Both the position numbers and the translations under genes were made by a program. The notes beneath the pieces are model-generated. The model made no database searches and was not told where the DNA came from. It was given only the letters and a program-made list of their open reading frames with translations. A stretch of 64,000 nt of DNA from Macrostomum lignano (Eukaryota), in contig NIVC01000293.1 in NCBI GenBank assembly GCA_002269645.1, forward strand, positions 248,001-312,000. The letters are read 5' to 3'. Each line of letters begins with the position of its first letter. Position 1 is the first letter of the stretch. This document shows positions 17,296 through 61,500 of this stretch, piece by piece.

Positions 17296-17452
17296 CTTTT
17301 TTTACCAGATGCCACCTGTCTATAAAGCGTGCCGATGTTCTTTGCCATTGTACTCTTTTTGCAGACGCCACCTGTCTATAAAGCGTGCCGATGTTCTTTG
17401 CCATTGTACTCTTTTTGCAGATGCCACCTGTCTATAAAGCGTGCCGGTGTTC
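17296..17452 (+). repeat. ~56-bp tandem repeat, about 3 copies
   Basis: cagatgccacctgtctataaagcgtgccgatgttctttgccattgtactctttttg is repeated. Confidence 0.85.
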
Positions 17453-29829: not shown

Positions 29830-30100
29830 GTGGGGGCTAATAGGACTAGGTTAATGAATAGGGGGTAGGGGCTGGTAGGACTGGGTTAATGAATAGGGGG
29901 TGGGGGCTAGTAGGACCAGTTCTACTGAATATTAGAATGAGGGGCTAGTAGGACCAGGTCCATTGAATATTAGATGGGACGCTGTAAGACCAGGTCTACT
30001 GAATATTAGGGGGTAGGAGGCTGCAGGCTGGTAGGATCAGGTATACCAAATATTAAGGGGTCGGGGATAGTAAGACCAGGTCTACTGAATTTCAATATGG
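29830..30100 (+). repeat. ~35-38 bp minisatellite (ggggctagtaggaccaggtctactgaatatta)
   Basis: About 7 degenerate copies, with another partial copy near 30990-31045. Confidence 0.75.
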
Positions 30101-30953: not shown

Positions 30954-31789
30954 TATTGGAGTTAGATAAGATCAGATTTATTAAATATCAGGGTGCTAAT
31001 AGGACTATGTCTACTGAATTTTTGATGGGGGAGGGGGCTGGTAAGTAGAGGTGGGATGGGATCCCGATTCCAATCCAAAAATCTCGGGATTCCAAGGAAA
31101 ATTGGATTCCCATGGGACCAGAATCCCAGCCCTAAAAAACCCAAGAATGGGCAACAGGTCTTTTGATTAAAAATTTATAGAATTAATGATTATTTTAATG
31201 TATTTTGTTTTAACTTGAACTCATTACATGATTATTATTTTGTTAGTAAAACTATGACTAATATAAGAGTCTAAGAGATATAAATTGTCTAGGTCTATAG
31301 GCCTACAAAGAGTAAAACTAGTGTTTTAAAAAGATTATTGACAAAAAGATATAAAAAGGTTATATATTATTTAGGCATATGCCAAAACAATATTTTTAAG
31401 TATTTTACTAATTAAAAATAGGCCTAGGTAATTATAAAACATTCCATATAAGCAAGCATCTTTCTACACTAGGAATAGTAGCAATTCTAGGCTAGATATT
31501 ATCAGGAAATAGTCTAATAGAAGAGGCTAAGTAAATATACCATGTTTCATTGACAATGAGTCAATAAAGCACGCCATAGGGTCTATCTAAAAAGATCTAT
31601 AGTATTAAGTATAAGGGACATAAAAAACTGTCAAAGGAGTGCAAAAACTGTCCAAGGGGACATGAAAATGATCTAGGGTTGCTAAATGTGAATGTTAAAG
31701 GGTGTCAACTGCCAACTGGCAAGGAGTTGCTATATAAACAGTTAGAGTGATGCTATTACCCACTATTTTTTACGACTGGCCGTAGAAAT

Positions 31790-32865: not shown

Positions 32866-35015
32866 TGTGGCAGTTGGGGCTGCTGTGGCAGGTGGCTGCT
32901 CCTGGTTTTTAAAAATATTTATTTATTAGCAGTTTATTAACTTTTGAAATTGATGTTTCACGTCAAGTGTACGTTTCCCAAGCCGTTATTTCGTTTCCCC
33001 TTGAAGGGATAGTTTTCCGTAATTTTGTCACGCACCCCATCCCGCTATGGGATTTCTTTGATCTCCACCCCGTGTAAATTGTTTTCCCTCCGTTTGCCTC
33101 CTTGCTTATCCCGTTTAATTTTATGCTTTTTCATTACTTCGCCGCCGCTGGACCAGACGCGTTAATGTAAATCTCCTTATTCTGGTCCAGAAGCGATTTT
33201 TTGCTCACTTTTGCTTATATATGTGTGTTTTTATGTTTTGTGTTTTTGCTCGCGCTCTCGCTCTTTCTCTCTCTCTCCCGTTGTGTTTGTTTGTTTTTAG
33301 TTTTGTTTAGTTCACCTTTGTCTTGCCTATCTTTAGTTTGGTTAAGTTTTGTCAATTTTTCACTTGTCTAGTTAAATAGTCGTCGCACCGCGGCACGCCG
33401 AATTCATCGTCGTCAATAAGTAATTTATCAATTTATCCTGCTCAAGCTAATAAATAAAGAATAATATCCCGCCAATTTATTAATATTTTATTCGTTGACA
33501 TTAAGCCATAGCCTATCTTGAGTCTTTTGCCCGTGGGGCGTTAAATAACCAAGTTTTCTCAGCTCAAGAAAGCTCAGAGACTTATTCGTTCCGTAATACG
33601 TAAATTACGGTAGTGGCAGCTCTACCCTACTGAAAGTAACCAGCTCAGCAACTCTACACATTGATTTAACGGTGTCTAAATCCCCGGTGTTTCATCACTT
33701 TGAACGACCGCGCCGTTACACGACCGCTCCGCTACGATTGCGACTACCCTCCCCCCGGACTTGAGAACCCGGCTGTCGGAGTAAAATGAGAAAGATCACG
33801 TTGTGATTCGTCTGCGCGAATTTTCCGGCTTCACTCGTGCGAACTCAACGTCGGCGGCAATTCAAACGTGGAATCCGCCCCACCACATTGGTGTCAGCAA
33901 ATTTCAAACCAAACCCAAGCGAAGAAAAAATTCTTTCTCCACCCCCACCTCACTGCCACTAACAGTTAATGAAACGTTTTCTCTAAATTTTGAAATTTAA
34001 AATTTTTTTCGACGCTCATTAAACCACCCCGTGACCATTCTTCGCTGTCCCCAGTTTTTGGCCCTGTGTGTCCACCCTGTGTTCCCAGTTGTTGGTATAT
34101 TTCGTCATTTTTCCCCGTTCTTGTGATGGTTGTCCCACACCTTTCTCCGGCCTTTTGCGTCCCTCTTTTGGTAACTTTGTTTAATTCCCTATGTTTTCCA
34201 TGTTAAGTTTTCTGTTCTTTGCTTGGTCCCCGTGACCACCTTTTGCCTCCAGTGTTTGACCCCAATAGTCCATTCGTTGCGTTTTTAATCCCTATTTAAT
34301 GGTGCCCCTGGAGCTGCGCATTTTTCATGCCGTTTTTTCCTCCCGATTTCATCCCTTTTCCTTTTCCTTTGCCGGCCCTTAGTCTTTGCCTTGCCTTGCC
34401 CATTCAATTCAACTATTAATATTTAATTCCGCCCAATTTATTACGACGAGTGTTTAGTTCGTTAGTTCGTTTAGCTATCCAGTAGTGCACCGCGGCACCA
34501 GCCGAATCAATCCGCCGGAGTAGGCTCGGTCGACATCTATTATTATTATACTCTTAGCTAATTTCGCACGCTCGCCAATCTATTCTGCTGACTGAGCAAA
34601 TTATTATCTTACCGCTCATAAGCTCTAATAAAACAGTTGATCCGCCATTAATTTCGTTAAATAAACTGAAGCCTAGCATATTTTGAGTCATTTGCCCGTG
34701 GGGCGTAAAATAACCCAGTCTCATCTCGAAGCAAGCTTTGAGACTTCAACGTTCCGTAATACGTAAATTACGGTGGTGGCAGCGCTACTCTACTGTTAGT
34801 AAAAAGTCAAACATACGAGGTACATTAAGTTTCGGTGTCTGAGGACCCGCTCTGAACGCTCGCGCCTAACGAAGACCGCTTGCCTACGACTGAGACTACC
34901 CTCCCCCCGGAATTGAGGACCCCGGCAGACGGAGTATCTACGAGACTTCTAAATTGGGATTCGTCCACGCAATTTCCGGATTTAATCTGTGCGAATGAAC
35001 GACGGCGCCGATTCG
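32866..35015 (+). mobile_element. LTR 'B2' (32866-32883 + 33957-~35015), 3'-truncated
   Basis: Starts TGTGGCAGTTGGGGCTGC. U3 aligns with LTR B and the family core is at 34685. Similarity ends where the MULE remnant begins. Confidence 0.82.
32884..33952 (+). mobile_element. Solo LTR 'E', inserted 18 bp inside B2
   Basis: TGTGGCAGG...CCCCACCTCA with TSD CTGC (32880-32883 / 33953-33956). An internal CCACCACA-t-TGGTGTCAGC is at 33880-33898. Confidence 0.9.
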
Positions 35016-36131: not shown

Positions 36132-37452
36132 CTAAAATACGAGCTGAAGAAAATGTGGGTTTTTGACATTTATACGTGTTTTTTACACTGTTTTCTGTTT
36201 ATCAAGTAAAAAAACAACAATTTTACACGGCAGAATGAAGACTTTAGAAAGATTTTAGATCCATCATTTTAGTAAATATTTCACGAGATAATAGCGAGAA
36301 AATTGCGTGCAGTAAAATTAAATTAAAAAATTTCTAATTAAAAAATAAAGTAATATGAAAAAATGTCTGACTTTAATGAAATTGTTTTATTGAATATTAA
36401 AAGATGCTGTAATGACTTTTTGCATTGGAACCAGAAAATATGCAGAAATATTTGTTTTTTTGTACAAATAATAAAATGGGCAATTAGATTCCTTTGGCGG
36501 TGAGTATGAATGCAAACACTTTATGGCCCGGCGCTCCAAGTCTAGATATTATAGTGGCAGCCTACTACATTCAGATTCTTACTAAAATATCTTTGCAAAA
36601 TAGGACAATCTTAACACTTTTGAAAAAATCGCTTTTGAAAATATCTGAGAAGTTTTTGAAAAGTTTTCATTTAGTAATTGAATCGACAATCGATTGAAGA
36701 TTGAAGATTGCTTTTCGATATAAAATGCTTTTTTCTTTGTCATTTTGCCTATTTGGACTATGCTATGAAAGTAAAGTTGATTGATATGATCTCTCCTATG
36801 ACCTGTGTCAATGCTTCATAAATTTGCATTGTATAGGCCTAGCACTTGTGATATTACTTACTTATGCAGCCAACAATATTTTTCCCTTGCAAATTGTTTG
36901 AATATAATTGTAAAGGCCTATTTACCCTATTGTATTATGTTGTGTGTCCGTGCCTAGTATATTTTGGCCTAGTAGATATTATACCATTATTTCTAAGGGC
37001 AAACTCCTTAATTAGACTAGGTATATTTGTTTGATGCATCTATAAATTAATTTCCTTATTTTCAAAGCTTAGCCCTGGCTTGGGTCTATACTGTATGTTT
37101 ATATTATTATTTTTGGCTTTGAAAATACTTAATATAGTAGGCCTAGCCTTAATAGCCTCAATATACCAGCCTCCTACTATATATAGTCTCAATATATTAG
37201 ACCTATTTCTAGACTCTAAGCCTAAGTAGGTTTATAAATCATATAAAATATACGTTTTTAAATTAAATAGGTCTATGCTACAATTTTGTATTATTTTTTA
37301 GCTAATGTCAATAACATACGGAGTTTTTATTTTTATATAGACTATGCATAAAGATGGCTCATTTTATTGTAAGCTATGATATTTATTTTTATATCCATAA
37401 TACTAAAAATCAAACTTATTTTATCTATATATAAAAATATATAATTTTTCAG

Positions 37453-39411: not shown

Positions 39412-40584
39412 TTGTTAAATGAATTCGCTTCAAATTACAATTTCAGCCAATCAGCCTTATCGACTGCAATGTCTACTCGTAAAAAGCGGCGCAAAGTTTT
39501 GTCATCTACCAAGTCCATCCTCGCCACAAAATCAGAATCAGATTTGTCCGATTCTAGCATCGAGGAAGTTGTCAACGTTGGTTATTTGGGTGCCTCATCA
39601 AGCTCAAGCGCTAGGCAACAACCATATGTGCAACATAATTATATGTATTTTGATGAGCCGAATGTACAGCATGAAGACCAAGAAGACATTGAGTCTGTTT
39701 CTACTAGCTCGCGCTCATCCTTTTGTGAGAGTAGTGGTACTTCAAGCAACCACAGTGAAACATTCAGCGATTATGGTCCAAGTTCTCTCCGTCAAGATGT
39801 GCTCGACTACTGCTTGGAGACAAACCAGACGAGAGAAAGTGGAGACAAGTTGCTTGCATTTCTTCGGAAGTATCATCCCGAGTTGGCAAAAGACTACAGG
39901 ACACTTACAAGTGTCATAACATCATCAAATAATTATGATGAAGTCAATACAGAAACGTTCCATCATTTCGGTTTGGCATCTGGACTTCGAAGTTTATTAC
40001 AATCCAATCAGTCTTTTCTAGCTAAGAAGCAGGACAATCATGACTGGGAGTTTATCCTTGAGATAAGTATTAATGTTGACGGACTACCACTTACATCATC
40101 TGGACATTCGGCCTTTTGGGTTGTCTCTGCTAATGTAAAGGAAATAAAAAACTCAGATTTTGTTGTCTCCGCGCATTTTGGAACTTATAAGCCAGAGGAT
40201 GTAAGCTTACTTCTGTCGCCTCTCATCAACGAGTTGGATAATCTTCTCCGCGATGGATTTCATGTTAGTGAAAGTGAAGTCTACCCAGTCAAGCTGCGGT
40301 GTGTTTCGTGCGATACTCCAGCACGCGCATATGTTAAAGGAATAAAGTCGCACAACAGCTATTATGCATGTGATCGATGTTGTATTCAAGGAAATCGGGA
40401 TCAAGGAACAATGACATTTTGCCAAATTACGGGCTCAATTCCTCGAACCAATTCCTCGATTTCTGGTACGAGATTCAGTTATAGAATTTCATGCATAGGG
40501 TTTGAATCTGTGAAATGCAAAATGGTTTGCTTTCCAAAAGGTTCAACTTTTGTTTTCATTAGTATTATGAGTACTCATAAATGA
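39412..40584 (+). pseudogene. Animal CACTA/EnSpm (CMC) transposase, 3'-truncated near 40430
   Basis: SINVDGLPL, FW, G..KP and CDTPARAYVKGIKSHNSYYACDRC are present. Confidence 0.85.
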
Positions 40585-42124: not shown

Positions 42125-43109
42125 CAGATTTGGCATCCAACAGGCATACCAAACTTCGGCGAATCCTGTTGGTTTAATGCAGGAATTCAAGCTATTGTCG
42201 CCGCTTTGAGGGCATCAGGTGTGAACGCCTGTGAACTTGTACTGAACCGGAAATGCAGCTGATCAAGACGTTGCTAACTGATCCAAGTTTGCAAGGCAAT
42301 TTTGCTGCCCAGACAATTCGAAAGCAAGCTCTGGCAGCCTTTCAAAAATATAATAACGAAGACGACATAGACAGTGCGGCTCAACAGAAATGCGCTATTG
42401 AAATGGTCGAAAATGTTATCCAACTGCCGCAAATTCAGACGTCTTTTTCATTTGAGGTAAAAATGATATTTTATATTTAATTTGTTATATACCGGCCGGG
42501 TTAGCGTTTTTCTCTGAGCCATGTATACTTTTAATAAAGGTACAACTTCCCCCAACCAAAACTTTATACTTCTAGAAAACCACGTACACAATGTGCATCG
42601 AATGCAACTGCGTGTCGTCTTATTGCTCCGCAACCAAGCACAGTCTGGCTTTGATTCCGCGCGCAAAACAATGCGGAGCAGGAGAATCTTGTCGATATCA
42701 TTCAGAATGATTTTCGGAGTTTTAAATAATCGACGATCAATCAGCGAATATTTGCTTAAACTGTGGCAGTTCGAAGTCCGTACAGGTATCGGATGCGTTC
42801 AGCACCCCTAGAATTTTATGCGCTGCTATCTATCGGGCCCAAACCAGTAGTGGCGGCAAGATTTCAAAAAACCGAGTGCCAGTTCCGATTTGCCAATCGT
42901 TTCGACTGAATGATGCGCAGATGTATCATCTAAAGGCAGTAATAGTTCACAAGGGGACTGCAGTTGCTCGAGGCCATTATGTCTGCCACGTTTTCACGTC
43001 CGATGGAGATGTTTACTTGGTAGACGATTTAAGCGTTCGCCCAGCTACAGCGGCGTTTTCGCTAGACAGCATCAGTCGGGACTCTGCCATTCTAATGTAC
43101 TCAAAATAG
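42125..43109 (+). pseudogene. Ubiquitin-specific protease (peptidase C19-like), spliced and frameshifted
   Basis: The Cys box is GIPNFGESCWFNAGIQ and the His box is YHLKAVIVHKG...GHY...YLVDD. A QQ..AIE motif and a CIEC knuckle are also present. Confidence 0.78.
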
Positions 43110-44197
43110 TCAAAATTCCTTTGAGTTTATCTTATTATATAGTCTAGATGCAAAAATTCCATAAAGAAAGACTGCTGAATTTTCGCGAATTTTCTGGTAT
43201 TGAGTGTAATGATGTACTTAGTTAATTAATTTTTTGTGGTATTTCAACATATTGAAACCATGCTGAATGCAGTGCGCGAACTTTACATCGAAAAGGAAGA
43301 CTGATTTCACTTTGAATTTATGGTACTTAAAATGATTGATAAAACACCCAAATAATTTTTAATTATTTTGTGAAGCAAAAAATAATTATAATAAATGAAC
43401 ACTCTAAATATAAATTGAAAAAGCCTTTTACAGTTACAATATAAATGCTAGTGTAGCAATTGTTATAACTAATAAAACACATTTGAGCAATCTATGCGTT
43501 CGCTTTTAAAAGACTCTCTCTACTGTAGTGTACAGGTTCCTTCAAGGTTGCATTGCGTCTATCTGCTGGCTTGCTTGACTTACCAAACAAATACTAATAA
43601 ATAAATTTACTCTTGTTTTGCCTGTGAATTCTAGGCCAATACGAAAAGCGTAATTTGTCTAATTTATATATTTTGTAGGCCCTAGGCCTAGTCGATTATG
43701 CTTGCTTTATCCTAGTTACTTTTTGAATGTAAAAATTAAAGATTTGGCCTAGGCCCTAATGGATTAGGACCTGGCCTCTAATTAATTACTTTTACTGAAT
43801 TTTATCATATTGATAAGACTTTGTTCTTACTTTTACATTAATAATGTAGGTCTGCTTATAATATGCTCTATAAATAATGTTTGTTTTTCAACTCTAATTA
43901 ATTATACTTAGGCCCTACTTAAGAGTTATAAGGTCAAGGAATCTACTGCAAGTCTAAGAAAGTCTAATTTTATCTCTTGACTCTCTTGGTCTAAAAAATG
44001 TTCATCTTCTCCAATCTTTGCAAAAAAAATAATTAAGTGGTCCTAGCCTAAGCCAAAAAACATTCACATAAAGTTAGACTTTTTTGTATTTTATTGTAAA
44101 CTTAATGTTTAAGTGTGTTTAGTAAATTAAAAATTTATAACTAATCTGTTTTGTATTATTTTTATTTCTTTTATCATTGTCTTAGATTTCATTAGAA

Positions 44198-45073
44198 ATG
44201 GAAAAGCGAAATCAAAATCGTAAAGTCCAAGAACAATTGATTCAAGATCTAACTGGGTTTTTTCTGGAGATCAACAAGCTTCTTCATTTAATCCTAATTC
44301 TAGGCCTTCTATTGAGCCTATTGCTATTAATGAAACTTTGACCTTGACTAGGCCTAGTGAAGTATCAGCTTCAATTTTGTTAGAAAGTGATAAGCAGTCA
44401 AGTATATATAAAGGAATTAATCATTCAAACAACTGTACAATTTACCAAGATTTTCAAGATGTGATTGATATCATTATCAAAGATGATATTCAAAAGGAAG
44501 AACAAGAACAAGATTCTACTGTTGAATTTGATGATCTAGTTAGTGATAGCTTACCAAGTCACAATGATTTAACAACTGAGGAAAAAGCCAATCTGGCCAT
44601 TGATCTTTTGCAATTCTACCTGATCTTCAATATCCCTGAAAAGGCTATGCTACATCTTCTTAAGCTTTTGACTAAGCATAACATTGAAGGATGTCCTACT
44701 TCAATGTACCATCTTAAAAAACCTTTGACAAAGAATTTCCAGTTTGGTAAAGTTGCTTCAGTGAAACTGTCAGCCAATAGTGGATATTCTTATTTATCTA
44801 TTGCAAGGCAATTTAAAATTTGTCATTGATGCAATCCAATCTAAAAAGTTGAGACCTATTATTCATTTTGACAATTTACAACTTCATTTTAATATTGATG
44901 GACTTCCTCCTTTTCGCTCATTTTTTGTTGGTCTCTGGACAATTTTAATGAGCATTCTAGGTGTTATTTATCCAATACCAATTGCTATTTATTGTGGACT
45001 TGGAAAGCCTAATTTGCAAGAATTTACTAGAAAATTTGTTAGTGAGCTTAAAGAACTACACTGCCGTGAGTAG
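44198..45073 (+). pseudogene. Second CACTA/EnSpm transposase fragment
   Basis: HFNIDGLPPFRS...LWTIL...IYCGLGKP...FVSELKEL is present, with frameshifts and truncation at about 45070. Confidence 0.8.
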
Positions 45074-45299
45074 AGTTCGTGCCTTGTCTGATCTGTTTGT
45101 TACCTGTTGCGATTTCGTTAGATTTCAGCGCCTATTTTCTACAGGTGGTATTCTGGCACAGGTAAATGAGCAGAAGCGTTTATTAGCTTTGTGCGAGAAA
45201 TGAGCCAGCAGCAATTGGCGTTGATGATATAATAGTAATGTAGTTATCAGTCACTCGGTATTGAGTGGGTGTTACGCGCAGCGAAAATCTAGCTTTGAC

Positions 45300-46330
45300 G
45301 TTCTACACAGCAGACATGGCAATATTGCGTTTATTTACATCACTACTAGAAAGTAGTCGCCTACCATGCAAGGTTAGATTTTTCTGTGCATAATCTTATG
45401 CCTATTGTCAACGCTAGTGCATGGTGGGCCAGGATTTTAGAAATTTATATAAGTCGTTGATAATGGAATTCCATTCCAGTGCCTAGCCTCATTAATTATG
45501 AGTGTCAAGGCGGTCTACTGTGCATGTGGTTGCTCTTGTTTAGCACAAATTCTCTTGCATTCTGCAGGCTGTGATAATTTCAGCATTATTCAGCAAACAG
45601 AATAGTGTGTTAAGCATTCGCGCCTTAGAAGGTGGGCAATCGTGAGGTAAAAATCTTTACTAGCTGTGATAATATACTGTTCGGATAGATAGGTTTATGC
45701 ACAGTAGGCAATGCAGTACTGCGGTATATAGCTTAGGAAAGATGAAATGTGTGCCAAATGATTAAATAATTGCCTCTGCTCATTAAGTATGGGCAGTATG
45801 GCGGTCTACTGTGCACTTTGTTCGCCCTTGTGTGACACACCACTATTGCGTTTTGCCTACTGATAATGTGACAGACACTATTCAAACGTTATCCAGTTAA
45901 CAAGATGCGTGTCACTCATGCGCCTTAGAAGGTGGGCGTTCGAATTTCATAATAGAATTCCCGACGATAGTGCACAGTAGGCAATGCAGTACTGCGGTGA
46001 TACGACTCTCGACTCTTTGCCTAGACTCATTAGGTTTGAGTACTATGGCGGCTTGCTATGCACGTGGTTGCCTTCAGGTGGGCAATCGATTTTATGGTTT
46101 AAATACCAGAACTTTAATGTCGGCCTTAGTTTGTGCATAGCAGGCACTGCAATATTGCGACGGCCTATGGCCTAGGTAGGAAACAAATTGCCGTGGCTCA
46201 TTAGAATGAGTTCATTGGCGGTCTGCTGTGTAGGTGGTTGCACTTGGGCAGCAGCACAGTATACTGTTGTATTCAGCATGCAGAAAAGTGTGCTGCCCAT
46301 TCGCCTTAAGCGTGCAATCGTTATTAATCT
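45300..46330 (+). repeat. Array of 4-5 diverged ~275-bp units with conserved base-pairing potential
   Basis: Arms TGCAYRGYRGGC / GTCTRCTGTGCA recur at 45418/45513, 45698/45804, 45971/46051 and 46134/46221, with compensatory and G-U changes. Confidence 0.75.
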
Positions 46331-46859
46331 ATTGGTGAATTGGCTGCGCGTAACATCGCCCGCAAAATGTGCAGTAAAGGTCCGTCAAAGTGTGAGCGGC
46401 ATCGTTTGGCATTGCTTTGATATTGCTTAAAGAAATAATAGTTTGCCTACCAAACAAAAAGGCTATTTTACTTTTGGAATATTTATGATTGATAAAATAT
46501 CCTCTTCTACCGATTAGCTATTCGATGCACGACGCTTTGAGTTTTAGACACAGTCTTTTATTTGAAAAATATTTTAAACAGCTTTAGAAATGTTTAGAAT
46601 GTTTTAAAAATTCCGAAAACTTTCCCTACAATCAGATACTTGAATACTGTTCAAATTCCATTGATACGTCCAAACTGCAAATGAAATTGTGCATTTATTA
46701 AGTGTTATGCTTAGCATTTTTTTCTGTAAAAGTCTTTCTCTCACTCTCTGTTTAATACCCTATTTTCTTAACCAGTTAGCATCTTCTTATATTAGACAAC
46801 TTTTCACATTTAGTGTACACACTTGTATGTTTTTCCAGAGTGTTTGTCTAAGTCTTTCT

Positions 46860-47075
46860 GATCGTATGTTCATCTCTTTAACAGTCTGTCTGTCTCTCTG
46901 TCTCTCTGTTTGTCTGTCTGTCTGTCTGTCTGTCGGTTTGTCTGTTTGTCTGTCTTTCTGTCTGTTCATCCGTTTAACTATCTTTCTGTTCATCTGTTTA
47001 TCTGTCTGTCAGATTGTATGTTTGTCTCTTTTTCTGTCCATCTATCCATTTATGTATCTATCTATGAACCATATG
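46860..47075 (+). repeat. (CTGT)n-like microsatellite
   Basis: Direct reading of the sequence. Confidence 0.9.
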
Positions 47076-47419: not shown

Positions 47420-47484
47420 CCTTCCTTCTCTCTCCTCTCTCCCTCTCTCTCTCCTCTCCCTCTCTCTCTCTCTCTCCTCTCTCC

Positions 47485-47517
<33 letters not shown>

Positions 47518-47560
47518 ACTCTCTCTCTTTCTCTCTCTTTCTCTCTCTCTCTCTCTTTCA
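47420..47560 (+). repeat. (CT)n microsatellite
   Basis: Direct reading of the sequence. Confidence 0.95.
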
Positions 47561-48195: not shown

Positions 48196-48674
48196 ATGAT
48201 CGTCAAACTCTATTTTAATGAACAGGGAGGCGGGCGAGGCGAAGACGGGCGAGGCGGTGGCGGGCGAGGCGGAGGCGGGCGAGGCAGAGGCGGAGGCGGG
48301 CGAGGCGGAGGCGCAGGCGGAAGCGGAGGCGGAAGCGGAGGCGGAGGCGGGCAAGGCGGAGGAGGAGATGGCGGCGGAGGAGGAGATGGCGGAGGAGGAG
48401 GAGATGGTGGAGGAAGAGGAGGCGGGAAGGGTTCAGTGCAAAGTAAGTCTGAATTAGTATAAATGTGTATATACATACACGTATGTATATAAATAGCAAA
48501 AACGCTTACAATCATTTCTATATTGTAGAGAGATGCTTCGTCTGTAAGAAAATAGGGCACATTGCCCGTAACTGCTGGAATAAAAAGAAGCAGCAGACAA
48601 AGCAACCATCGCAACAGGAGCAGCAGACAACGCAACAAGAGCAGCCGCAACAGCAGCAGGAGAAGCAGGGATGA
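48196..48674 (+). CDS. Spliced Gly/RGG-rich plus CCHC zinc-knuckle plus Q-rich ORF; 5' end unknown
   Basis: Removing intron 48443-48528 (GTAAGT...TAG) joins GGRGG repeats in frame to KRCFVCKKIGHIARNCW. Confidence 0.55.
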
Positions 48675-51419: not shown

Positions 51420-51790
51420 TCCCTCAGTTGCGAAATTCTAGGAGAGCGAGAGAGAGAGAACGAGAGAGAGAGCGAGAGAGAGCGAGAGAGAGGAAGGGCG
51501 AGAGAGAGGGAGAGCGAGAGAGAGAGGGAGAGCGAGAGAGAGAGGGAGAGCGAGAGAGGGAGAGATAGCGAGAGAGAGCGAGAGAGAGGAAGGGCGAGAG
51601 AGAGAGAGGGAGAGCGAGAGAGAGAGGGAGAGCGAGAGAGCGAGAGAGACAGGGGGACAGAGCGAGAGAGGGGGAGAGAGCGAGAGAGAGAGAGCGAGAG
51701 AGAGAGCGATAGAGAGCGAGAGAGAGGGGGGAGAGAGCGAGAGAGAGAGAGGGAGAGTGAGAGAGAGGGAGAGAACGGGAGAGAGCATAA
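51420..51790 (+). repeat. (GA/GAGC)n compound microsatellite in a Helitron intron
   Basis: Direct reading of the sequence. Confidence 0.95.
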
Positions 51791-52059: not shown

Positions 52060-52602
52060 ATGCCGGGTGATGGGAATTGCTTTTTCCACTCTGTGTGTGA
52101 TCAGTTGCGGGGTACTGACTTAGAGACGGACATATTCTCGCTCCGCGCTGATTTTACCGCCCGCGCTGTCCCCTTTCTGCGTGAGTTACTGGAGCAGGGC
52201 GTTTTTGAGGCACCTGACTTTGACCGCATTTTGCGTGAGTGTTCCAGTCACGGAACTGACATTCCAGATGAAATGGTACCTCTTTTTAGCCGTTGCTATC
52301 CTGTTGACCTTATCGTGTACCAGACGGACGGTGGTCTGTATGTCAATCACCACCAATCTGATGTGCAGCCACCTATTGCAGTTGTGAGAGTGATGCTGTC
52401 GAATGAGCACTACAATTCTCTACGAGTGCCTGATTTTCAGCCGGCCGCGCAGACCACGCCCACAGGTGCTGCATCTGATGGCAGGCGCCCCTCGTACTCT
52501 CAGGTTCCTCCGGGCGCCAGGAATCGTTCTGCTGAGCCAGACCAGACTGCTGCTGCAGATCCTGTGAACACGGCAGCTGATTCGATGGACAATTCTGTGT
52601 GA
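52060..52602 (+). CDS. OTU cysteine-protease exon of the Helitron RepHel gene
   Basis: The catalytic motifs PGDGNCFFHSV and EHYNSL are present. Confidence 0.88.
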   Translation: MPGDGNCFFHSVCDQLRGTDLETDIFSLRADFTARAVPFLRELLEQGVFEAPDFDRILRECSSHGTDIPDEMVPLFSRCYPVDLIVYQTDGGLYVNHHQSDVQPPIAVVRVMLSNEHYNSLRVPDFQPAAQTTPTGAASDGRRPSYSQVPPGARNRSAEPDQTAAADPVNTAADSMDNSV

Positions 52603-55600
52603 GTACTCTACTGTCATTCATATTTTTATGTCTAGCTATAATGCATGATGCTATGCTAACCGGAAATGCGTCCAGAAAAACTGAATATAATTGAATATAA
52701 CTAATATAGAGTAGCTCTCGGTTCTTACTTTCGCAGACCGGAAGTCACCAAGGCCCACTTTGCTGGACGAATGGCGCTGCCCTGTTCTCACTGCGGTGCC
52801 CTTCACTGGAAGCAGGAGGCGCCCGGGATCTGCTGCAACAATGGAAAAGTACGACTGGAGCCGCGCAACGTTCCCCGAGAACTACGTCAACTGCTGACCG
52901 GCGATCATGAGAAGAGCAGCACGTTCCTGGCGAACATGAGGAAGTATAACGCCGCCCTGCACATGACGTCATTCGGAGTGCAAGAACGGCATCTGAGGGG
53001 TGGCTCTCCTAGCGTCATCATTCAGGGGGAGCTGCATCATCGAATCGGGAGCCTGCTACCGGAGGAAAATTCAGTGCCCAAGTTTTGTCAAATATTCTTC
53101 TGCGACTCCGAGTTGGACACAAGGATGGCTTTGGTTCAAGGACTGGACCGTGGCCTGCTGGAACTGCTGCAGAATGTTCTTCACCGGGACAACTCTTACG
53201 TGCGCAGCTTCAAAGCCGCAATAGATAGACCGACCGACGATCCCGAGCTTCAGCACGCAGATCTCATCATTCGTGCCGATAGGAAGCCATCAGGAGAGCA
53301 TGCAAGGTAGGATGCAGTGCATAGTTTGGGGAGTTATACGATCGTATAATATTTAGTCAAAGAGCGTATAATAGTAATTCAACTGAAAGCCTACAATTTT
53401 GTGAAAAAAATCTGTAGTAGTTAATAAATGAATCTATCCAAGTGACTAATTCCAAGTGACTAATATATCTGACTAATTATATGACAAATATCTGGCAAAA
53501 TATCTGGCAAAAGCACACCCTAAACGTTTGATGACGTAAAACTCGGTGGGAATAAATGTTACCTTGGTTTTGTTCTCCCACGACTTAGAATGCCTTGCGT
53601 TTTTCGTTCTGTCGAGTTGCATTTGATTGTTTTTGCTATCAGTCAGCTTTGATATGTTATGTTTTACGAGTCTCTACAAGTTCTACGAGTGACAAGTGAA
53701 TATCAATACGGACGTCGTCTATTGTATTTTCTGTATGTTTCTTTTTCTCAATGTTACTTGCGTGTCTTTTCCACTTTGTGTACTTTTACTAATACGACGT
53801 ATGAAAGCAGAGCTTCTGTCTTTCTCTTCTTATTTTTGTCCCCCCATCTCTCTCTTTCTCCTTCTTTCTCTATATATATACATATCACTATTTCTCTTAC
53901 TCTTTTATTGTTTGCATTCTGATAGCTTCTGACATATTTTCTATCTCCAACTCACTGATCTCTGTTTGCACTTGCATGTGTAGGCGTACTCATTGCATCA
54001 ATCTGCCGCACCTGCACATTTTTCTCTCCTGGATCTTTTTTGTTCCTTCAATCAGACGTTTCAATCTGCCGACTGTCAGCGAGGTGGCAGTGCTGGTTCC
54101 TGATGGAGATGAAGACACCGACGGAATTTCAACGACGAAGCGAGACGTTCTCCTGCATCTGAGAGGCGGTGGCCTTCAGCGCATTGACGAGACCAACCGG
54201 TGCTACGACGCTCTAGAGTATGTCTTGTTTCATCCTCGAGGTGAGGACGGATGGCATCTGGGCATGACGATGACGAATGGTCGGAAGCTGACTCCCAAGG
54301 CCATGTATCAATACCTATTGATGGTGCGACCAGGGGTGTTCAATCCACTTCACTATGGTCGACGACTGCTGCAGCAGTACATTGTGGATCAAGCGGCCAA
54401 GATAGAGACGGAGCGACTCAACTACCAGAGAACTCATCAGGCGGATCTGCGCTCGGAGACTTACAGTGGCTTAAGAGATGCTCTGGTTGCTGTGGACGGC
54501 GATGGCAGTCAGGTTGGACAGCGAGTCATTTTGTCGTCGACATTTGTTGGAGGACCTCGCTACCTTCTTGAACGCCAGCAGGACGCTTTGGCGTATGTAC
54601 AGCATTTTGGCCGCCCAGATCTGTTTATCACAATGACTGCCAATCCCAACTGGGACGAGATTGTACAGGAGTTGCTACCAGGTCAAAATGCTTCTGATCG
54701 GCCAGACCTGACAATGAGAGTATTCGATTTGAAGCCAAGAGACCTGATTCAGCACGTCTTCCCTACATTCGAGGAATCCGACGAGCGCAACAGGCTGTTC
54801 GAGTCAAGAGCCATCCTCGCCCCGCACAACCGAACCGTCGATGAAATCAACGCTGCCTGCCTGGAGCTCTTCCCTGGCGAAGGGGTCGAGTACCGGTCGT
54901 TCGACTCCATCCCGAATGATGAAGATGCGGCTACCCAGTTTCCCGTGGAGTCTCTCAACAGCCTGGATCCTCCTGGACTGCCGCAACATCTGCTTCGACT
55001 CAAGGTGGGTATGCCGGTGATGCTGCTGCGGAATCTGCACCCGCCTCGCCTGTGCAACGGCAGCCGACTGATCGTGACCAAACTGGAGCCCAATGTACTG
55101 GTCGCGAGGATTGCAACTGGAGCGTACAAAGGTGAACAGGTGTTTTTGCCACGCATTCCATTGGAGCCAAGTACGGCTGACTTACCGATTGTATTTCGAC
55201 GGCTCCAGTTTCCTGTTCGTCCTTGTTTTGCTATCACGGTCCACAAGAGCCAAGGCCAGACTCTGGACTTTTTTGGTGTACATTTGATTCTCTCTTGCTT
55301 TCAGCATGGACAATTGTATGTTGCCTTGAGCAGAGCCCGTGATCCCAAAAACATTCGCGTATTGGCTCCTGACAACAAGACTCGGAATGTCGTTCTGAAG
55401 CCTGTTCTCTCATAGGAATTTCTTGTCGTGCTATACATTAGTTTACATTGATGCGACAAAGACATTATCGATTTTGCATTTCCTGGCATACTAACGGCTT
55501 GTATTTGTTAGGAACGCTGTTAAAAAAATTGTTTGCCTCCTTACTGCAATACTGCACTGTTATCCATACACTTATCTGTTCATCGTGTGCAATTTTATTA

Positions 55601-55857: not shown

Positions 55858-56743
55858 TTCCCATCCATCTAAATTCCATCAGGCCAAATTCACACACATT
55901 GCAACTCCTTGCCATGGACGTTGAAATCAGCAAAAAAAATTTCATTTTGCTGATGTCAATTAAATCAAGACCTACGTTGTTCAACTTTCTAGAAAGATTT
56001 ATTATCTCTATCGTTATTGTACCCAATTTTCCTATTGGTTACAATGCAGGGGATTCATCCATCCCCTCTCCTACTCATCCATCCCCTCTCCCATCCATCC
56101 ATCCATCCTCCTCCCACTCTCACCCATCCCATCTCCCTCTCTATCTCACATTTATCCCACTGTCATATGGATAATGTAAGTTTACCAAATGGTCACTTCA
56201 TTGGCGCTTTCCATATATTTTTTTCATTTTGCCATCCGTCCATGCATCGAAATTGGCATGTAAAACTGCGCACAGTTAAATTCTGTGGGAAAATTCGTCA
56301 ATGGGATGTTATATCCGTTCGCATATACTATTCCATGCACACAGAGTCATTTCATACAAATATGTCAGGAAAGAATAACAAACACGAGAAGTATTACTTA
56401 ACGCAGCAATTAAACAGCATAGCAGGCTATCCTCGCCTCGATAAAGAAGCACAACAGATCTGAGTCCGTATCCTAATACCGTAGGTGAATTTGTTTTTTT
56501 TGTCACTGTCATTGTCGTAAAAAAATAGTAGTGGTGTAATAAGTGATCCGCTGCAAGATGTATCATTGCGTGTATAACAAACTATACTATAGTATGTATT
56601 AATTAACTACAATTTTGGGAAACTTACTATGCCATCAGTCAATAAAGTAGCTTCCTCGGGATGGGATCTACCATGCACGAGACTCATACAAGTGGTTCAG
56701 TAGCATTTTTTTGCATTCTGTTTTACGCAGTGTGGCAACACCT

Positions 56744-57734: not shown

Positions 57735-57941
57735 TTACCACTGTGTGCACTGCGAGCCGCCGACCTGCACCGTCGCAGCCGCAGCCGCAACCGCAACCGC
57801 AGCCGTAGTCGCAGCCACGGCAGTAGCGGTGGTTCCGTTCAGACGGATAACTACTTCGATTGTTAATGGAAAGAGAGAGACGGAGAGAGACACGGACAGA
57901 GAGAGACGGATAGAGAGAGAGAGTGAAAGAGAGAGAGAGAG

Positions 57942-57987
<46 letters not shown>

Positions 57988-58020
57988 GGAGAGAGAGAGA
58001 ATGAGAGAGAATGGGAGAAT
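57735..58020 (+). repeat. (TG)n, (GCAGCC)n and (GA)n microsatellites
   Basis: Direct reading of the sequence. Confidence 0.85.
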
Positions 58021-58526: not shown

Positions 58527-61500
58527 ATCAGACGTTTCAATCTGCCGACTGTCAGCGAGGTGGCAGTGCTGGTTCCTGATGGAGATGAAGACACCGACGG
58601 AATTTCAACGACGAAGCGAGACGTTCTCCTGCATCTGAGAGGCGGTGGCCTTCAGCGCATTGACGAGACCAACCGGTGCTACGACGCTCTAGAGTATGTC
58701 TTGTTTCATCCTCGAGGTGAGGACGGATGGCATCTGGGCATGACGATGACGAATGGTCGGAAGCTGACTCCCAAGGCCATGTATCAATACCTATTGATGG
58801 TGCGACCAGGGGTGTTCAATCCACTTCACTATGGTCGACGACTGCTGCAGCAGTACATTGTGGATCAAGCGGCCAAGATAGAGACGGAGCGACTCAACTA
58901 CCAGAGAACTCATCAGGCGGATCTGCGCTCGGAGACTTACAGTGGCTTAAGAGATGCTCTGGTTGCTGTGGACGGCGATGGCAGTCAGGTTGGACAGCGA
59001 GTCATTTTGTCGTCGACATTTGTTGGAGGACCTCGCTACCTTCTTGAACGCCAGCAGGACGCTTTGGCGTATGTACAGCATTTTGGCCGCCCAGATCTGT
59101 TTATCACAATGACTGCCAATCCCAACTGGGACGAGATTGTACAGGAGTTGCTACCAGGTCAAAATGCTTCTGATCGGCCAGACCTGACAATGAGAGTATT
59201 CGATTTGAAGCGGAAAGCTCTGCTTCAGAGAATCAGGACCGTCTTTGGCCTGCAGGTGGCACATGTTTGCAGTCTGGAATATCAGAAGAGAGGTAAGTAC
59301 TCGTAATTTTTTCCCGGTATTCAGGTGGTACTATTGAAGCATATTATTTCTCGAGCTGCAACATGCTCACGACACATAAAAACCATGTTTCTTCAATTCA
59401 GGGCTTCCACACGTTCATCTGCTTCTCTGGCTGGCAACTCGGGACAGAGTGACACCTGATCGATACGACGAGATCGTCTCCGCAGAGATCCCTAGCGCCG
59501 AGACGAAGCCGGAACTACACAAGCTGGTGATCACCCACATGCTACACGGACCCTGTGGCAAGACGAACCCGTCCTGCCCGTGCATGGATAAGGGCAAGTG
59601 CACTAAAGGATTTCCAAAGGATTTCCAGATCGCCACAGTGGTAAACGATTCGGGCTACCCATACTACCGTCGACGAGCGCCTTCAATGGGTGGCCACGTG
59701 GGAAAGAAATTGTTTCGAGGGAAGGAGATGACACTGAACAATGGGTAAGTGTATTGCTCAGCCATTGTTTTTCGCTATTTTACTGAACAGCATCTCATTT
59801 TAGAACCCTATGTACTAACAGCATCTCGTTTTGGGACTTATTTTTTATCCTTATTTTCGTGCAAAGTAATCGACTTGTAACCATGTATAGGCTTCTTAAA
59901 TATAATATCCTCAGCGTCAGAAAGAAGTAATACTTCAGGACATAAATGCCTCGCAGATGTTTTTTTACTTAAATTGATATTTGTTTTTTCCTAGGATTTG
60001 TAAGCACCAAACTTATTTTAATTACTTTGGTGCTTCCTCCCCCAAACAAATTCTTGTCCTCCCTTAGATTCGTGGTCCCATACTCGCCGAAGCTGCTTGC
60101 GGAGTTCCGGTGTCATCTCAACGTGGAGGTCTGCGCCACGGTGAAAGCGATTAAGTACGTAGTTAAGTACTTAAACAAAGGATCCGACATGGCGGTTTGC
60201 CAGCTGAGCCGAGAGCTTCGGAACCGAGACGAGATCAGCGCCTACCTGCTAGCTCGCTACCTGGGACCACACGAAGGCGCGCAGATAATCTTTGGCCTGG
60301 ACGTTCACAGCCGGTCACCACCGGTTGTGCCTCTGAGTGTGCATCTGCCAGGCAAGGTCAAGGTCTACTTCACGGAGCAGACGGCAGCGCAGAGAGCAGT
60401 GCAGCCACCCCGCAGCACCTTGACGGCCTTCTTTGAACTGTGCCGGACCGACAGCTTCGCTCGGCAACTGCTATACGGAGAGCTCCCTCGCTACTTTGTA
60501 TGGCATGTGGACAAAAAGGAATGGCAGCGGGCCAAGCGAGGTGCACAAGTGGAAGGCCATCCGGACGTTCGACAGCGTGACGCCATCGGCAGAATCTACA
60601 CCGTCAGTCCGCGTGCTGGTGACGTCTTTTATCTTCGCCTGGCCCTCCTGCGCGTTCGAGGCCCAGTCGGCTACGAGGCCCTGCGCACAGTCAACGGAGT
60701 TTTGCAGCCAAGCTTCAAGGAAGCCTGCAGAGTCCTGGGCTTTCTGGAGGACGACAAACACTGGCAGTTGTGCATGGAGGAGGCGGCCGAAACTCGGATG
60801 CCGACTGCACTTCGCTGTCTGTTCTGCGTCATCCTCTTCTTCGGTGACACCAGTGATATTCCCAGCCTGTGGGATCGATTTCGTGCTGCCATGGGCGAGG
60901 ACTTCGTTCATCAAGGATTGGACGAGGAGACGGCAAGCAACCGAGTCCTGCAAGAGCTGGCGGTGCGGCTGGAAGCCATGGGCGGTGGCCGACTGCCTGA
61001 CTTCGGCCTGCCGGAACCGAGACAGCAGACAGCAGAGGATGCGCCCGAATATGACAGTCAGCAGTTGCACAACTTTGTCGAAGAACGCGAGCTGCTGCTG
61101 ACTGAGGAACAGAGGACAGTCTACAATGTTGTTCGAGAGAGTCTGCAAGGTGGGCGTGGTGGACTTCATTTCATTGATGCAGCTGGTGGCACCGGAAAAA
61201 GTTTTCTGCTCGAACTTCTCCTGGCGTGGGTGAGATCACGTGGTGAAGTAGCCAGCACCGGAATTGCGGCCACTCTTCTACCTGGAGGGCAGACTGCGCA
61301 CTCAGCATTCAAGATTCCCGTGTCACCAGTGCGCCGGGACAACGCCTTCTGTTCGATCGGCAAGCAGAGCAACCTTGCGGAGAGATTAAGAAGAACCCGA
61401 CTGATTGTGTGGGATGAGGCTGCCATGATGCACCGGAAGGACCTGGAGACCGTTGAGCGTAGCCTCAGAGACACAGTGGTAGATCAGCCTTTCGGCGGTC

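What the first reader, a model, noticed from the sequence alone, without database searches (positions are those of the whole stretch)
45300..46330. Unexplained array of covarying multi-stem RNA-like units
Each unit has a 12-bp closing stem whose two arms change together: tgcacagtaggc/gtctactgtgca, tgcatggtgggc/gtctactgtgca and tgcatagcaggc/gtctgctgtgta. Inside are a palindrome (GCAGTACTGC or GCAATATTGC) and a hairpin TTGCC..CTCA-TTAnnnn-TGRG..GGCGG. A CGCCTTAGAAGGTGGGCAATCG tail follows. Mismatches are mostly G-U on the + strand, which points to RNA-level selection on +. The first arm (45304-45315) is also the perfect complement of the last (46221-46232). Spacers diverge while stems persist, unlike a simple satellite, and I cannot match it to a known ncRNA.
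Basis: partly seen in the sequence, partly recalled or inferred. Interest (0 to 1): 0.72.

Follow-up and report, generated by a model that had tools for sequence, protein, structure and literature searches.

The report
Five-module self-folding repeat beside transposon
About 1.1 kb of non-coding animal-like DNA, next to a broken transposon gene, is built from five diverged repeats whose 12-base stems have stayed complementary through matched mutations; this points to a folded single-stranded molecule, probably an RNA, that matches no known family and whose function is unknown.

Summary
Arms paired within a unit show no more covariation than shuffles do (387/500). Pairing each 3'-type arm with the next unit's 5'-type arm, and the first arm with the last, uses all ten arms once in a nested pattern. 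That gives 56 Watson-Crick and 4 G.U pairs out of 60, five positions changed on both sides, and 0/500 shuffles reaching the score. The region is therefore one closed fold (45265-46363), not a string of independent units. A strand-symmetric test still favours the + strand (7 vs 0 interior G.U-type against A.C-type mismatches, 27 vs 5 at helix ends). I found no Rfam family, tRNA, hammerhead core, second copy in the window, or relative in the viral, metagenome or prokaryote collections or in four loci of related transposons. The flanking ORF is a 3'-truncated transposon gene. Best reading (about 0.4): a transposon-linked structured RNA of a new family. Single-stranded DNA or transposon-end explanations remain open. 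No test of transcription was possible.

The parts
45265..45285 (+). Outer stem I, 5' strand (GTGGG TGTTACGCGCAGCGAA)
   Evidence: Its core 45270-45285 pairs with 46340-46355: 16 nt, 94% complementary (I4). The MFE extends it to about 21 bp with a bulge, reaching 46363.
45304..45315 (+). Arm a0 (TACACAGCAGAC), 5' strand of helix HE, which closes the ring
   Evidence: Pairs 12/12 Watson-Crick with 46221-46232 and with no other 3'-type arm (I6, 48, 52).
45319..45328 (+). Palindrome P2_0 (GCAATATTGC)
   Evidence: D2. Same variant as P2_4. The full-length MFE pairs the two.
45342..45357 (+). Small hairpin ACTACT-AGAA-AGTAGT
   Evidence: MFE.
45359..45429 (+). Helix HA (GCCTACCATGCA 45359-45370 with TGCATGGTGGGC 45418-45429) around a 47-nt insert; a degenerate module without D2
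   Evidence: 11 WC + 1 G.U. Two positions are changed on both sides relative to HB. Chosen by the MFE.
45463..45474 (+). Palindrome ATGGAATTCCAT (the unit-1 counterpart of P2)
45480..45512 (+). Hairpin P3_1 (TGCC..CTCATTA..TGAG..GGCG)
   Evidence: (D1).
45513..45709 (+). Module B: helix HB (45513-45524 with 45698-45709) enclosing D2_1 (closing stem 45527-45535/45634-45642, long variable hairpin about 45537-45617, small hairpin GCCTTAGAAGGT) and a spacer hairpin
   Evidence: HB has 11 WC + 1 G.U. D2 fold. Global MFE.
45713..45803 (+). Ring segment 2: P2_2 (GCAGTACTGC, 45713-45722), a middle hairpin and P3_2 (45771-45803)
45804..45982 (+). Module C: helix HC (45804-45815 with 45971-45982) enclosing D2_2 (closing stem about 45818-45827/45934-45942, variable hairpin, small hairpin) and a spacer hairpin
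   Evidence: (I3). D2_2 has z -3.81 on + and -1.13 on -.
45986..46050 (+). Ring segment 3: P2_3 (45986-45995) and P3_3 (46018-46050)
46051..46145 (+). Module D: helix HD (GCTTGCTATGCA 46051-46062 with TGCATAGCAGGC 46134-46145) enclosing the minimal D2_3 hairpin (46065-46088) and a spacer hairpin
   Evidence: 11 WC + 1 G.U. Two positions are changed on both sides relative to HB (I7, 48, 52). D2_3.
46149..46220 (+). Ring segment 4: P2_4 (GCAATATTGC, 46149-46158), the GGCCTATGGCC hairpin and P3_4 (46189-46220)
46221..46232 (+). Arm a'4 (GTCTGCTGTGTA), 3' strand of the ring-closing helix HE
   Evidence: Perfect complement of 45304-45315.
46235..46320 (+). D2_4: closing stem TGGTTGCAC/GTGCAATCG, with a variable hairpin (46246-46303) and a small hairpin
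   Evidence: The hairpin gives a weak miRNA-like Rfam hit only (E 0.52).
46340..46363 (+). Outer stem I, 3' strand
   Evidence: (I4).
44500..45058 (+). Context: 3'-truncated, frameshifted fragment of a transposon protein gene (residues about 37-262 of a 610-670-aa family)
   Evidence: 724 homologs, best 47% identity. tblastn finds the rest of the gene nowhere in the window. A relative has a weak DUF4218 hit.

Best explanation
The region 45265-46363 is one closed, pseudo-five-fold fold of a single-stranded + strand molecule, most likely a non-coding RNA carried by or derived from a mobile element.

Shown:
- Ten 12-nt arms form five helices (HA-HE), each arm with one specific partner.
- Three of the five helices differ from the common sequence by matched changes on both strands.
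- Three inner helices (HB-HD) each close a three-way junction made of the helix, a D2 domain and a small hairpin. HA encloses only a small hairpin and has no D2.
- HE joins the first and last arms. Together with D2_4 and the outer stem it forms the same kind of junction.
- Between the helices lie nearly invariant elements (the P2 palindrome, the P3 hairpin with its CUCAUUA loop, GGCGG, AGGUGGGCAAUCG) separated by free-drifting spacers.

Inferred: pairing was kept by selection on a transcript. The helices act as a scaffold that displays several copies of the conserved loops to a protein or nucleic-acid partner, in the manner of lncRNAs built from repeated modules. Whether it is transcribed, processed or circularised is unknown.
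For: Specific, compensated pairing:
- In the nested register, 60/60 cells pair (56 WC, 4 G.U).
- 5 of 12 positions changed on both sides, and 0/500 shuffles reach the covariation score.
- The intra-unit register is no better than shuffles.
- A neutral transitions-only simulation gives P about 5e-4 that all pairs stay standard, and about 2e-7 that each helix also keeps at least 11 WC pairs.

The unconstrained full-length MFE picks the same helices.

The 941-nt core has z -7.97 against dinucleotide shuffles.

The D2 closing stem has two compensated positions (29/500 shuffles). Three long hairpins of different sequence occupy the same place in D2.

Strand evidence:
- Among helices shared by both strands' folds, there are 7 interior G.U-type mismatches against 0 A.C-type, and 27 against 5 at helix ends.
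- D2 closing stems have 8-9 bp on + and 4-5 bp on -.

No ORF longer than 80 aa lies in the region, and its translations have no homologs.
Against: - There is only one locus. All covariation is between paralogous modules, not between species.
- No homolog was found anywhere, and there are no expression data.
- z-scores are the same on both strands with RNA parameters and with DNA parameters, so the fold itself does not identify the strand or the chemistry.
- Several of the G.U positions are shared by descent among modules, leaving about five independent interior events.
- Internal T runs of 4-5 nt argue against a single Pol III transcript. No convincing promoter or terminator was found.
- It lies in a transposon graveyard next to a truncated transposon gene.
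Confidence: 0.4

Rival explanations
1. The selected structure is single-stranded DNA, not RNA. It could be a structural module of a mobile element that moves or replicates through a single strand (rolling-circle or hairpin-dependent). It could also be an integrated copy of a roughly 1.1-kb circular replicon that was opened in a hairpin loop.
For: - With DNA parameters the same helices form, with z -5.7.
- In the correct register the arm helices are almost pure Watson-Crick, so they do not need RNA wobble pairs.
- The closing module (HE + D2_4 + outer stem) has the same junction as the inner modules, but its small hairpin opens into the flanks. A circle linearised in a hairpin loop would look like this (inference).
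- Helitron-type genes lie 6-16 kb downstream in the same orientation.
Against: - The array ends have no Rep-type gene, nick-site motif or Helitron termini (TC...CTRR, A|T insertion).
- The D2 closing stems rely on conserved G.U/G.T wobbles, which are weak in DNA.
- There is no second copy in the window.
Confidence: 0.2
2. It is a non-autonomous DNA transposon, or the internal or subterminal repeat region of a deletion derivative of the adjacent element. The outer inverted repeat is the TIR. The 12-nt motif in both orientations is a set of transposase binding sites. The folding is a by-product.
For: - It lies directly 3' of a truncated transposon gene.
- A 12-nt motif recurs ten times in both orientations within 1 kb.
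- The terminal inverted repeat is 16 nt at 94% (I4).
- Tandem-repeat-bearing MITEs and CACTA subterminal repeat regions are known kinds (own knowledge; the papers listed were not read).
- The arms share TCTACTGT with a CACTA-like terminus at 43516-43530.
Against: - Binding sites should conserve sequence, yet the arms change and are compensated in specific pairs.
- No target-site duplication is visible and there is no CACTA at the array ends.
- No other copy was found in 64 kb of transposon-rich DNA, nor near four related transposon genes.
- Hairpins of unrelated sequence sit at the same position in D2.
Confidence: 0.2
3. It is a decaying minisatellite of a palindrome-containing unit with no function. 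Complementarity would be restored by DNA-level processes such as template switching or repair within hairpins.
For: - It is a single locus in repeat-rich DNA.
- All substitutions in the arms are transitions.
- Both strands are equally over-structured.
Against: - Six fully compensated pairs with no disruptive change.
- One helix spans 905 nt (I6), too far for hairpin-templated correction of 12-nt arms.
- + strand bias in wobble pairs.
- Loops and junctions are conserved while spacers drift.
Confidence: 0.12
4. It is a known small-RNA or ribozyme system: a retrozyme-like tandem repeat with self-cleaving ribozymes, or a polycistronic miRNA or snoRNA precursor.
For: - The variable D2 hairpins are 58-90 nt long.
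- One of them gives a weak miRNA-like hit (mir-96, E 0.52, 20 bits against a gathering score of 65).
- Tandem structured units are typical of animal retrozymes (own knowledge).
Against: - No Rfam family reaches threshold, and only two weak hits appear up to E 10.
- The array has no hammerhead core CUGANGA..GAAA.
- Units are only 56-67% alike in mean column identity rather than near-identical.
- The covarying helices link neighbouring units rather than defining separate units.
Confidence: 0.05

Closest known systems
lncRNAs built from tandem structured modules (Xist A-repeat, NORAD repeat units)
   Same: Several diverged copies of a module carry conserved short motifs and stems, separated by drifting spacers. 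Duplexes can form between repeats rather than within them, as proposed for the Xist A-repeat (own knowledge).
   Different: No sequence similarity and no evidence of transcription. Here the inter-module helices are 12 bp, individually compensated, and close into one ring. The host is an unidentified invertebrate-like genome.
Subterminal repetitive regions of En/Spm (CACTA) transposons
   Same: A roughly 12-nt motif is repeated in direct and inverted orientation over several hundred bp, next to a gene of a transposon protein family with weak Transposase_21/DUF4218 signals.
   Different: There are no CACTA termini or 3-bp duplication at the array ends. The motif sequence is not conserved but co-varies with one specific partner. 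The array also carries extra conserved hairpins and three-way junctions.
Tandem-repeat-containing MITEs / non-autonomous Helentrons of bivalves and Drosophila (pearl, DTC84, DINE-1 type)
   Same: A short non-coding element with flanking inverted sequences, a core of one to five roughly 160-290-bp repeats in fixed order, and microsatellites nearby ((GTCT)n at 46884). Helitron-type genes are in the window.
   Different: The microsatellite lies about 520 bp away rather than adjoining the array. There are no Helentron termini, no target duplication and no further copies in the window. Compensated helices are not a described feature of those elements (own knowledge; the papers listed were not read in full).
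Branched viroid-like circular RNAs / retrozymes
   Same: A few hundred to about 1000 nt, non-coding and highly self-paired. The ends emerge from a helix as if a circle had been opened.
   Different: No ribozyme motif. The modules are diverged rather than monomer multimers. There is no evidence for a circular form.
Integron attC sites (analogy only)
   Same: Imperfect inverted repeats in which structure rather than sequence is conserved, used as one folded single strand.
   Different: attC sites are bacterial, one per gene cassette, and recognised by an integrase. This window is eukaryote-like and has no cassettes.

Membership tests
Any Rfam 15 RNA family | Covariance-model score at or above the family's gathering score | tested here: not met
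   0 hits in the whole window. Up to E 10 in 45000-46700 there are only mir-96 (20 bits against 65) and mir-15 (14 bits against 57).
Hammerhead ribozyme / retrozyme repeats | Catalytic core CUGANGA ... GAAA flanked by three helices in each monomer | tested here: not met
   The pattern has 4 matches in the window, none within 45260-46365. Rfam has no hammerhead hit.
Hammerhead ribozyme / retrozyme repeats | Head-to-tail near-identical monomers | tested here: not met
   TRF finds no array. Mean column identity among units is 67% and 56% in the two domains.
tRNA / tRNA-derived SINE | Cloverleaf recognised by ARAGORN | tested here: not met
   0 genes on either strand.
CACTA (En/Spm) subterminal repeat region | Short motif repeated in direct and inverted orientation beside a TNP2-type transposase gene | tested here: inconclusive
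   The motif occurs ten times in both orientations. The adjacent gene fragment belongs to a 724-member family with only weak DUF4218/Transposase_21 signals. The gene is truncated, so linkage to the array is unproven.
CACTA (En/Spm) subterminal repeat region | CACTA... terminal inverted repeats and 3-bp target duplication bounding the element | tested here: not met
   The array ends are GTGGGTGTTACGCG.../...CGCGTAACATCGCCCGC with no duplication. The only CACTA-like terminus (43516-43530) has no partner.
CACTA (En/Spm) subterminal repeat region | Motif sequence conserved as a protein binding site | tested here: not met
   Arms differ at up to 3 of 12 positions, and the differences are compensated in one specific partner.
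MITE / TIR transposon | Terminal inverted repeats | tested here: met
   45270-45285 with 46340-46355, 16 nt, 94% (I4).
MITE / TIR transposon | Target-site duplication flanking the TIRs | tested here: not met
   The flanks ...GGTATTGA and AAAATGTG... share nothing.
MITE / TIR transposon | Multiple dispersed copies in the genome | not testable with these tools
   No other copy in the 64-kb window.
Helitron / Helentron non-autonomous element | 5' TC, 3' hairpin followed by CTRR, insertion between A and T (or Helentron subterminal inverted repeats) | tested here: not met
   Not present at the array or module boundaries on reading the sequence.
pre-miRNA cluster | Simple roughly 60-80-nt hairpins with about 22-nt duplex arms, matching known families or small-RNA reads | tested here: inconclusive
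   Three D2 hairpins are of suitable length, but there are only sub-threshold Rfam hits and no small-RNA data.
Structured RNA under selection (generic) | Statistically supported compensatory base-pair changes | tested here: met
   Met among paralogous modules only: 0/500 shuffles, 29/500 for D2, simulation P 5e-4 to 2e-7. Covariation between species could not be tested.
Structured RNA under selection (generic) | Transcription of the modelled strand | not testable with these tools
   No expression data are available. The promoter/terminator scan is uninformative.

The most novel reading that the evidence does not exclude
A previously undescribed class of roughly 1.1-kb, pseudo-five-fold, ring-closed structured RNA (or single-stranded replicative intermediate) in an animal genome. 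It would be built from modules whose helices are kept by compensatory evolution, and possibly descended from a circular replicon opened in a hairpin loop. It would act as a multivalent scaffold for a transposon or host factor.
Probability: 0.15. Interest if true: 0.75.

Novelty: new member of a known kind. Interest (0 to 1): 0.5.

Why it matters
Large RNA folds backed by covariation are rare in animal genomes outside the classical RNAs. If this one is transcribed, it would be a compact and unusually clear example. It has five helices of one family, each with its own compensated changes, so the structure can be read from a single locus. It would also provide a handle on how a transposon-linked RNA, or a single-stranded DNA intermediate, uses repeated three-way junctions. 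If it proves instead to be a repeat-bearing transposon, the compensated arms would still suggest that its ends act as folded single strands. The methodological lesson is general. In tandem repeats with inverted arms the pairing register is ambiguous, and the wrong register produces a spurious G-U signal.

Tried and rejected
- **Rfam:** gathering thresholds over the window and E up to 10 over the region gave nothing usable.
- **Specific motifs:** ARAGORN found no tRNA, and the hammerhead core pattern does not occur in the array.
- **Promoters and terminators:** the bacterial-type scan was uninformative.
- **Public collections:** exact and degenerate motif scans of viral, metagenome and prokaryote contigs returned 0 hits.
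- **Protein-level route to homologous loci:** I concatenated all stop-to-stop translations of the array, hoping to catch spurious ORFs called on similar DNA elsewhere. This found nothing.
- **Source genome:** five exact-protein look-ups of window ORFs, meant to locate the genome or more copies, found nothing on record.
- **Flanking ORF:** the first word-indexed homolog search found nothing. A full HMMER search then found 724 relatives.
- **Related transposon loci:** four were fetched (L001-L004; a fifth look-up failed). The covariance model, nhmmer profiles and blastn found no array-like sequence in them.
- **Intron hypothesis:** the flanking ORF stops at a GTGAGT at 45069, which suggested that the array lies in an intron. 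I rejected this because the remaining roughly 380 codons of the gene are nowhere in the window.
- **CACTA lead:** the terminus at 43516-43530 shares 8 nt with the arms, but no partner was found and the match is not significant.
- **P2-to-P2 long-range pairing:** this cannot be separated from shared descent because the palindromes are self-complementary.
- **Literature:** two searches turned up no described equivalent.

Full report
**Setting.** The window looks like transposon-rich eukaryotic, invertebrate-like DNA. It has long microsatellites. It carries ORFs of Helitron/Pif1 type, an OTU-like protease, a UCH domain, Harbinger- and THAP9-like proteins, and two copies of a transposon protein family with weak Transposase_21 signal. 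I could not identify the source genome: five exact-protein look-ups of window ORFs found nothing on record.

- All the quoted motifs are at the stated coordinates.
- The 16-mer GGCGGTCTACTGTGCA occurs 3 times within 3 mismatches, against 0.23 expected.
- The 22-nt tail occurs twice against 0 expected.
- The 12-nt arm motif occurs 10 times against 3.3 expected, with 7 of the 10 inside the array.
- The repeat finder recovers the repeat families and the inverted pairs.
- Tandem Repeats Finder reports nothing between 45032 and 46583, because units differ in length (170-291 bp spacing). Mean column identity is 67% in domain 1 and 56% in domain 2.
One is an inverted copy of the arm at 45359-45370. 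The other is an outer inverted repeat, 45270-45285 with 46340-46355 (16 nt, 94%), which the fold extends to 45265/46363.

**The pairing register.** I scored every 5'-type arm against every 3'-type arm.
- a0 (45304) pairs 12/12 Watson-Crick with a'4 (46221) only.
- a4 (46134) pairs 11 WC + 1 G.U with a'3 (46051).
- a2 and a3 pair 11 WC + 1 G.U with a'1 and a'2.
- a1 (45418) pairs 11 WC + 1 G.U with the inverted copy at 45359. That column was mis-indexed by one base and was re-done from the sequence.

These five helices (HA-HE) use all ten arms once and are nested without crossing.
- In this register 100% of cells pair. 5 of 12 positions carry changes on both sides (7 cells), and 0 of 500 shuffles reach the covariation score. 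Sliding the partner by one to three columns cuts pairing to between 15% and 44%.
The tally there is 37 WC, 10 G.U and 1 A.C, against 56 WC and 4 G.U in the nested register.
- I ran a neutral model that drops the observed numbers of transitions (6, 6, 5) at random on the common helix. It keeps all pairs standard in the three diverged helices with P about 5e-4. It also keeps at least 11 WC pairs in each with P about 2e-7. Allowing for the choice among 120 possible partner assignments, this remains very unlikely.
- The unconstrained full-length MFE chooses the same helices.

**Resulting anatomy.**
- Helices HB, HC and HD each enclose a D2 domain plus an AT-rich spacer with a small hairpin, which makes a three-way junction.
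- D2 has a closing stem UGGUUGCNC/GNGCAAUCG of 8-9 bp (weaker in D2_2, which has two U.U mismatches). It also has an optional long hairpin of 58-90 nt whose sequence differs between modules, and a small GCCUUAGAAGGU hairpin. D2_3 is a minimal 24-nt hairpin.
- HA is a degenerate module without D2.
- Between helices, in a large multiloop, lie the P2 palindrome, a variable spacer and the P3 hairpin. P3 abuts the next helix.
- HE joins the first and last arms. With D2_4 and the outer stem it forms the same junction as the inner modules, except that the small hairpin is replaced by the outer stem that leads into the flanks.
- The region is therefore one closed, pseudo-five-fold fold of about 1.1 kb, not a row of separate 110-280-nt units.
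- The resemblance to a circle opened in a hairpin loop is my inference, not a result.

**How strong is the structure, and on which strand?**
- The 941-nt core folds at -341.6 kcal/mol against -275.8 +/- 8.3 for shuffles (z -7.97) on the + strand. On the - strand it folds at -273.6 against -225.2 +/- 6.4 (z -7.62).
- DNA parameters give z -5.74 and -5.71.
- Both strands are therefore equally over-structured for their composition. The + strand's absolute advantage (-410 against -331 for 1106 nt) largely reflects 55% G+T.
- For a strand test that does not depend on which strand is folded, I took the 222 Watson-Crick pairs common to both strands' MFE structures. I then classified the transition mismatches inside or next to those helices. 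There were 7 interior G.U-on-plus against 0 A.C, and 27 against 5 at helix ends. From base composition I estimate an expected ratio of about 1.5 to 1.
- Three of the seven interior cases are the same D2 position in three modules, so about five are independent.
- D2 closing stems have 8-9 bp on + but 4-5 bp on -. D2_2 has z -3.81 on + and -1.13 on -.

**Other covariation.** The D2 closing stem has two compensated positions (UA to CG, CG to AU) and reaches its score in 29/500 shuffles. P2 and P3 are almost invariant, so they carry no information either way. The two P2 variants (GCAGTACTGC and GCAATATTGC) differ at two mirror positions. Because they are self-complementary and shared by descent, I cannot separate pairing between modules from ancestry.

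**What it is not.**
- No Rfam family, no tRNA, and no hammerhead core in the array.
- No ORF over 80 aa.
- No protein-level homolog of any reading frame across it.
- No other copy in the window by nhmmer, blastn or a covariance model with filters off.
- No match to conserved-motif patterns in viral, metagenome or prokaryote collections.

**Context.**
- The ORF fragment at 44500-45058 matches residues about 37-262 of a 610-670-aa protein family. That family has 724 members at E <= 0.001, with a best identity of 47%.
- A relative has a weak DUF4218 hit. The neighbouring family member at 39412-40584 has a weak Transposase_21 hit.
- The match stops at the ORF's end. The remaining roughly 380 residues are encoded nowhere in the window. 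The gene is truncated, so the array is not an intron of an intact gene, despite the GTGAGT at 45069.
- Four loci carrying related genes (26-41% identity to the fragment across all the hits) show no array-like sequence. The array is therefore not a conserved component of that transposon superfamily, at least at this distance.

**Interpretation.** Pairing of specific arm pairs has been maintained through at least six double substitutions with no disruptive change. This includes a helix whose strands lie 905 nt apart. That argues against neutral decay of a palindromic minisatellite and against simple sequence-specific protein binding sites. It argues for selection on a folded single strand.

The wobble bias and the D2 stems point to the + strand. 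RNA is the most economical reading (about 0.4). It would be a transposon-borne or transposon-derived non-coding RNA whose helices display repeated conserved loops, working like repeat-built lncRNA scaffolds.

Three rivals remain open:
- A single-stranded DNA role in a mobile element, or an integrated circular replicon (about 0.2).
- A repeat-bearing non-autonomous transposon whose outer repeat is a TIR (about 0.2). This has no target duplication and no other copies in view.
- Neutral decay with DNA-level correction (about 0.12).
- A known ribozyme, miRNA or snoRNA system is unlikely (about 0.05).

**Novelty and limits.** Everything rests on one locus and on paralogous modules. There are no expression data, and no orthologs could be reached. 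I rate it a new member of a known broad kind (repeat-built structured non-coding element linked to transposons), with moderate interest. The decisive work is a copy survey in the source genome and its relatives with covariation testing, strand-specific and circular RNA-seq, and chemical probing of the nested against the intra-unit register.

Noticed in passing
window 2367, 13348-14232, 26343, 31298-31426, 36834-37145, 43683, 44349: The palindromic octamer TAGGCCTA occurs 13 times against 0.66 expected. The related GGCCTAGG occurs 5 times against 0.6 expected. Most copies lie in AT-rich non-coding stretches, and one GGCCTAGG is inside the array (46169).
   Followed up: partly
window 43516-43530: A CACTA-type terminus (...CTCTCTACTGTAGTG, minus strand CACTACAGTAGAGAG) lies downstream of the first transposase/UCH element. 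It shares TCTACTGT with the array's 3'-type arms. No partner terminus was found.
   Followed up: partly
window 53976-55415, 58560-59306, 62091-62789; 56055-56141 and 63429-63511: A Helitron/Pif1-helicase-like region is duplicated. Identical ORF segments and identical tandem-repeat blocks lie about 7.4 kb apart.
   Followed up: no
window 52060-52602, 42876-43109, 48465-48674: There is an OTU-like cysteine protease ORF (PGDGNCFFHS) upstream of the Helitron-like ORFs, a UCH domain ORF (PF00443, E 1.4e-9) inside the first transposon, and a CCHC zinc-knuckle (gag-like) ORF fragment.
   Followed up: no
window 25261-25898, 17306-17452, 29811-30009, 61762-61863: There are young tandem repeats: 178/285-bp units at 96% identity, 56-bp x2.6 at 96%, 35-38-bp x5.5, and 25/39-bp units at 97-100%.
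   Followed up: no
window 46884-46965, 47427-47556, 51442-51785, 57872-58010: There are very long microsatellites: (GTCT)20, (TC)66, (GA)172 and (AG)69. (TC)n and (GA)n form long inverted pairs about 4 kb apart.
   Followed up: no
window 44780-45073 and L001 6215-6946: The window's transposon gene fragment and one distant relative (P0002) both end their ORF right after the conserved EL..L motif. In L001 a frameshifted continuation follows. In the window nothing follows.
   Followed up: partly
window 21317-21347 and 33704-33735; 20710-20746 and 26696-26734: The same short tandem motifs (ACGACCGCGCCGCTAY; CCCATCCTTCGC) recur at sites several kb apart. This suggests several copies of one repeat family at about 20-35 kb.
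   Followed up: no
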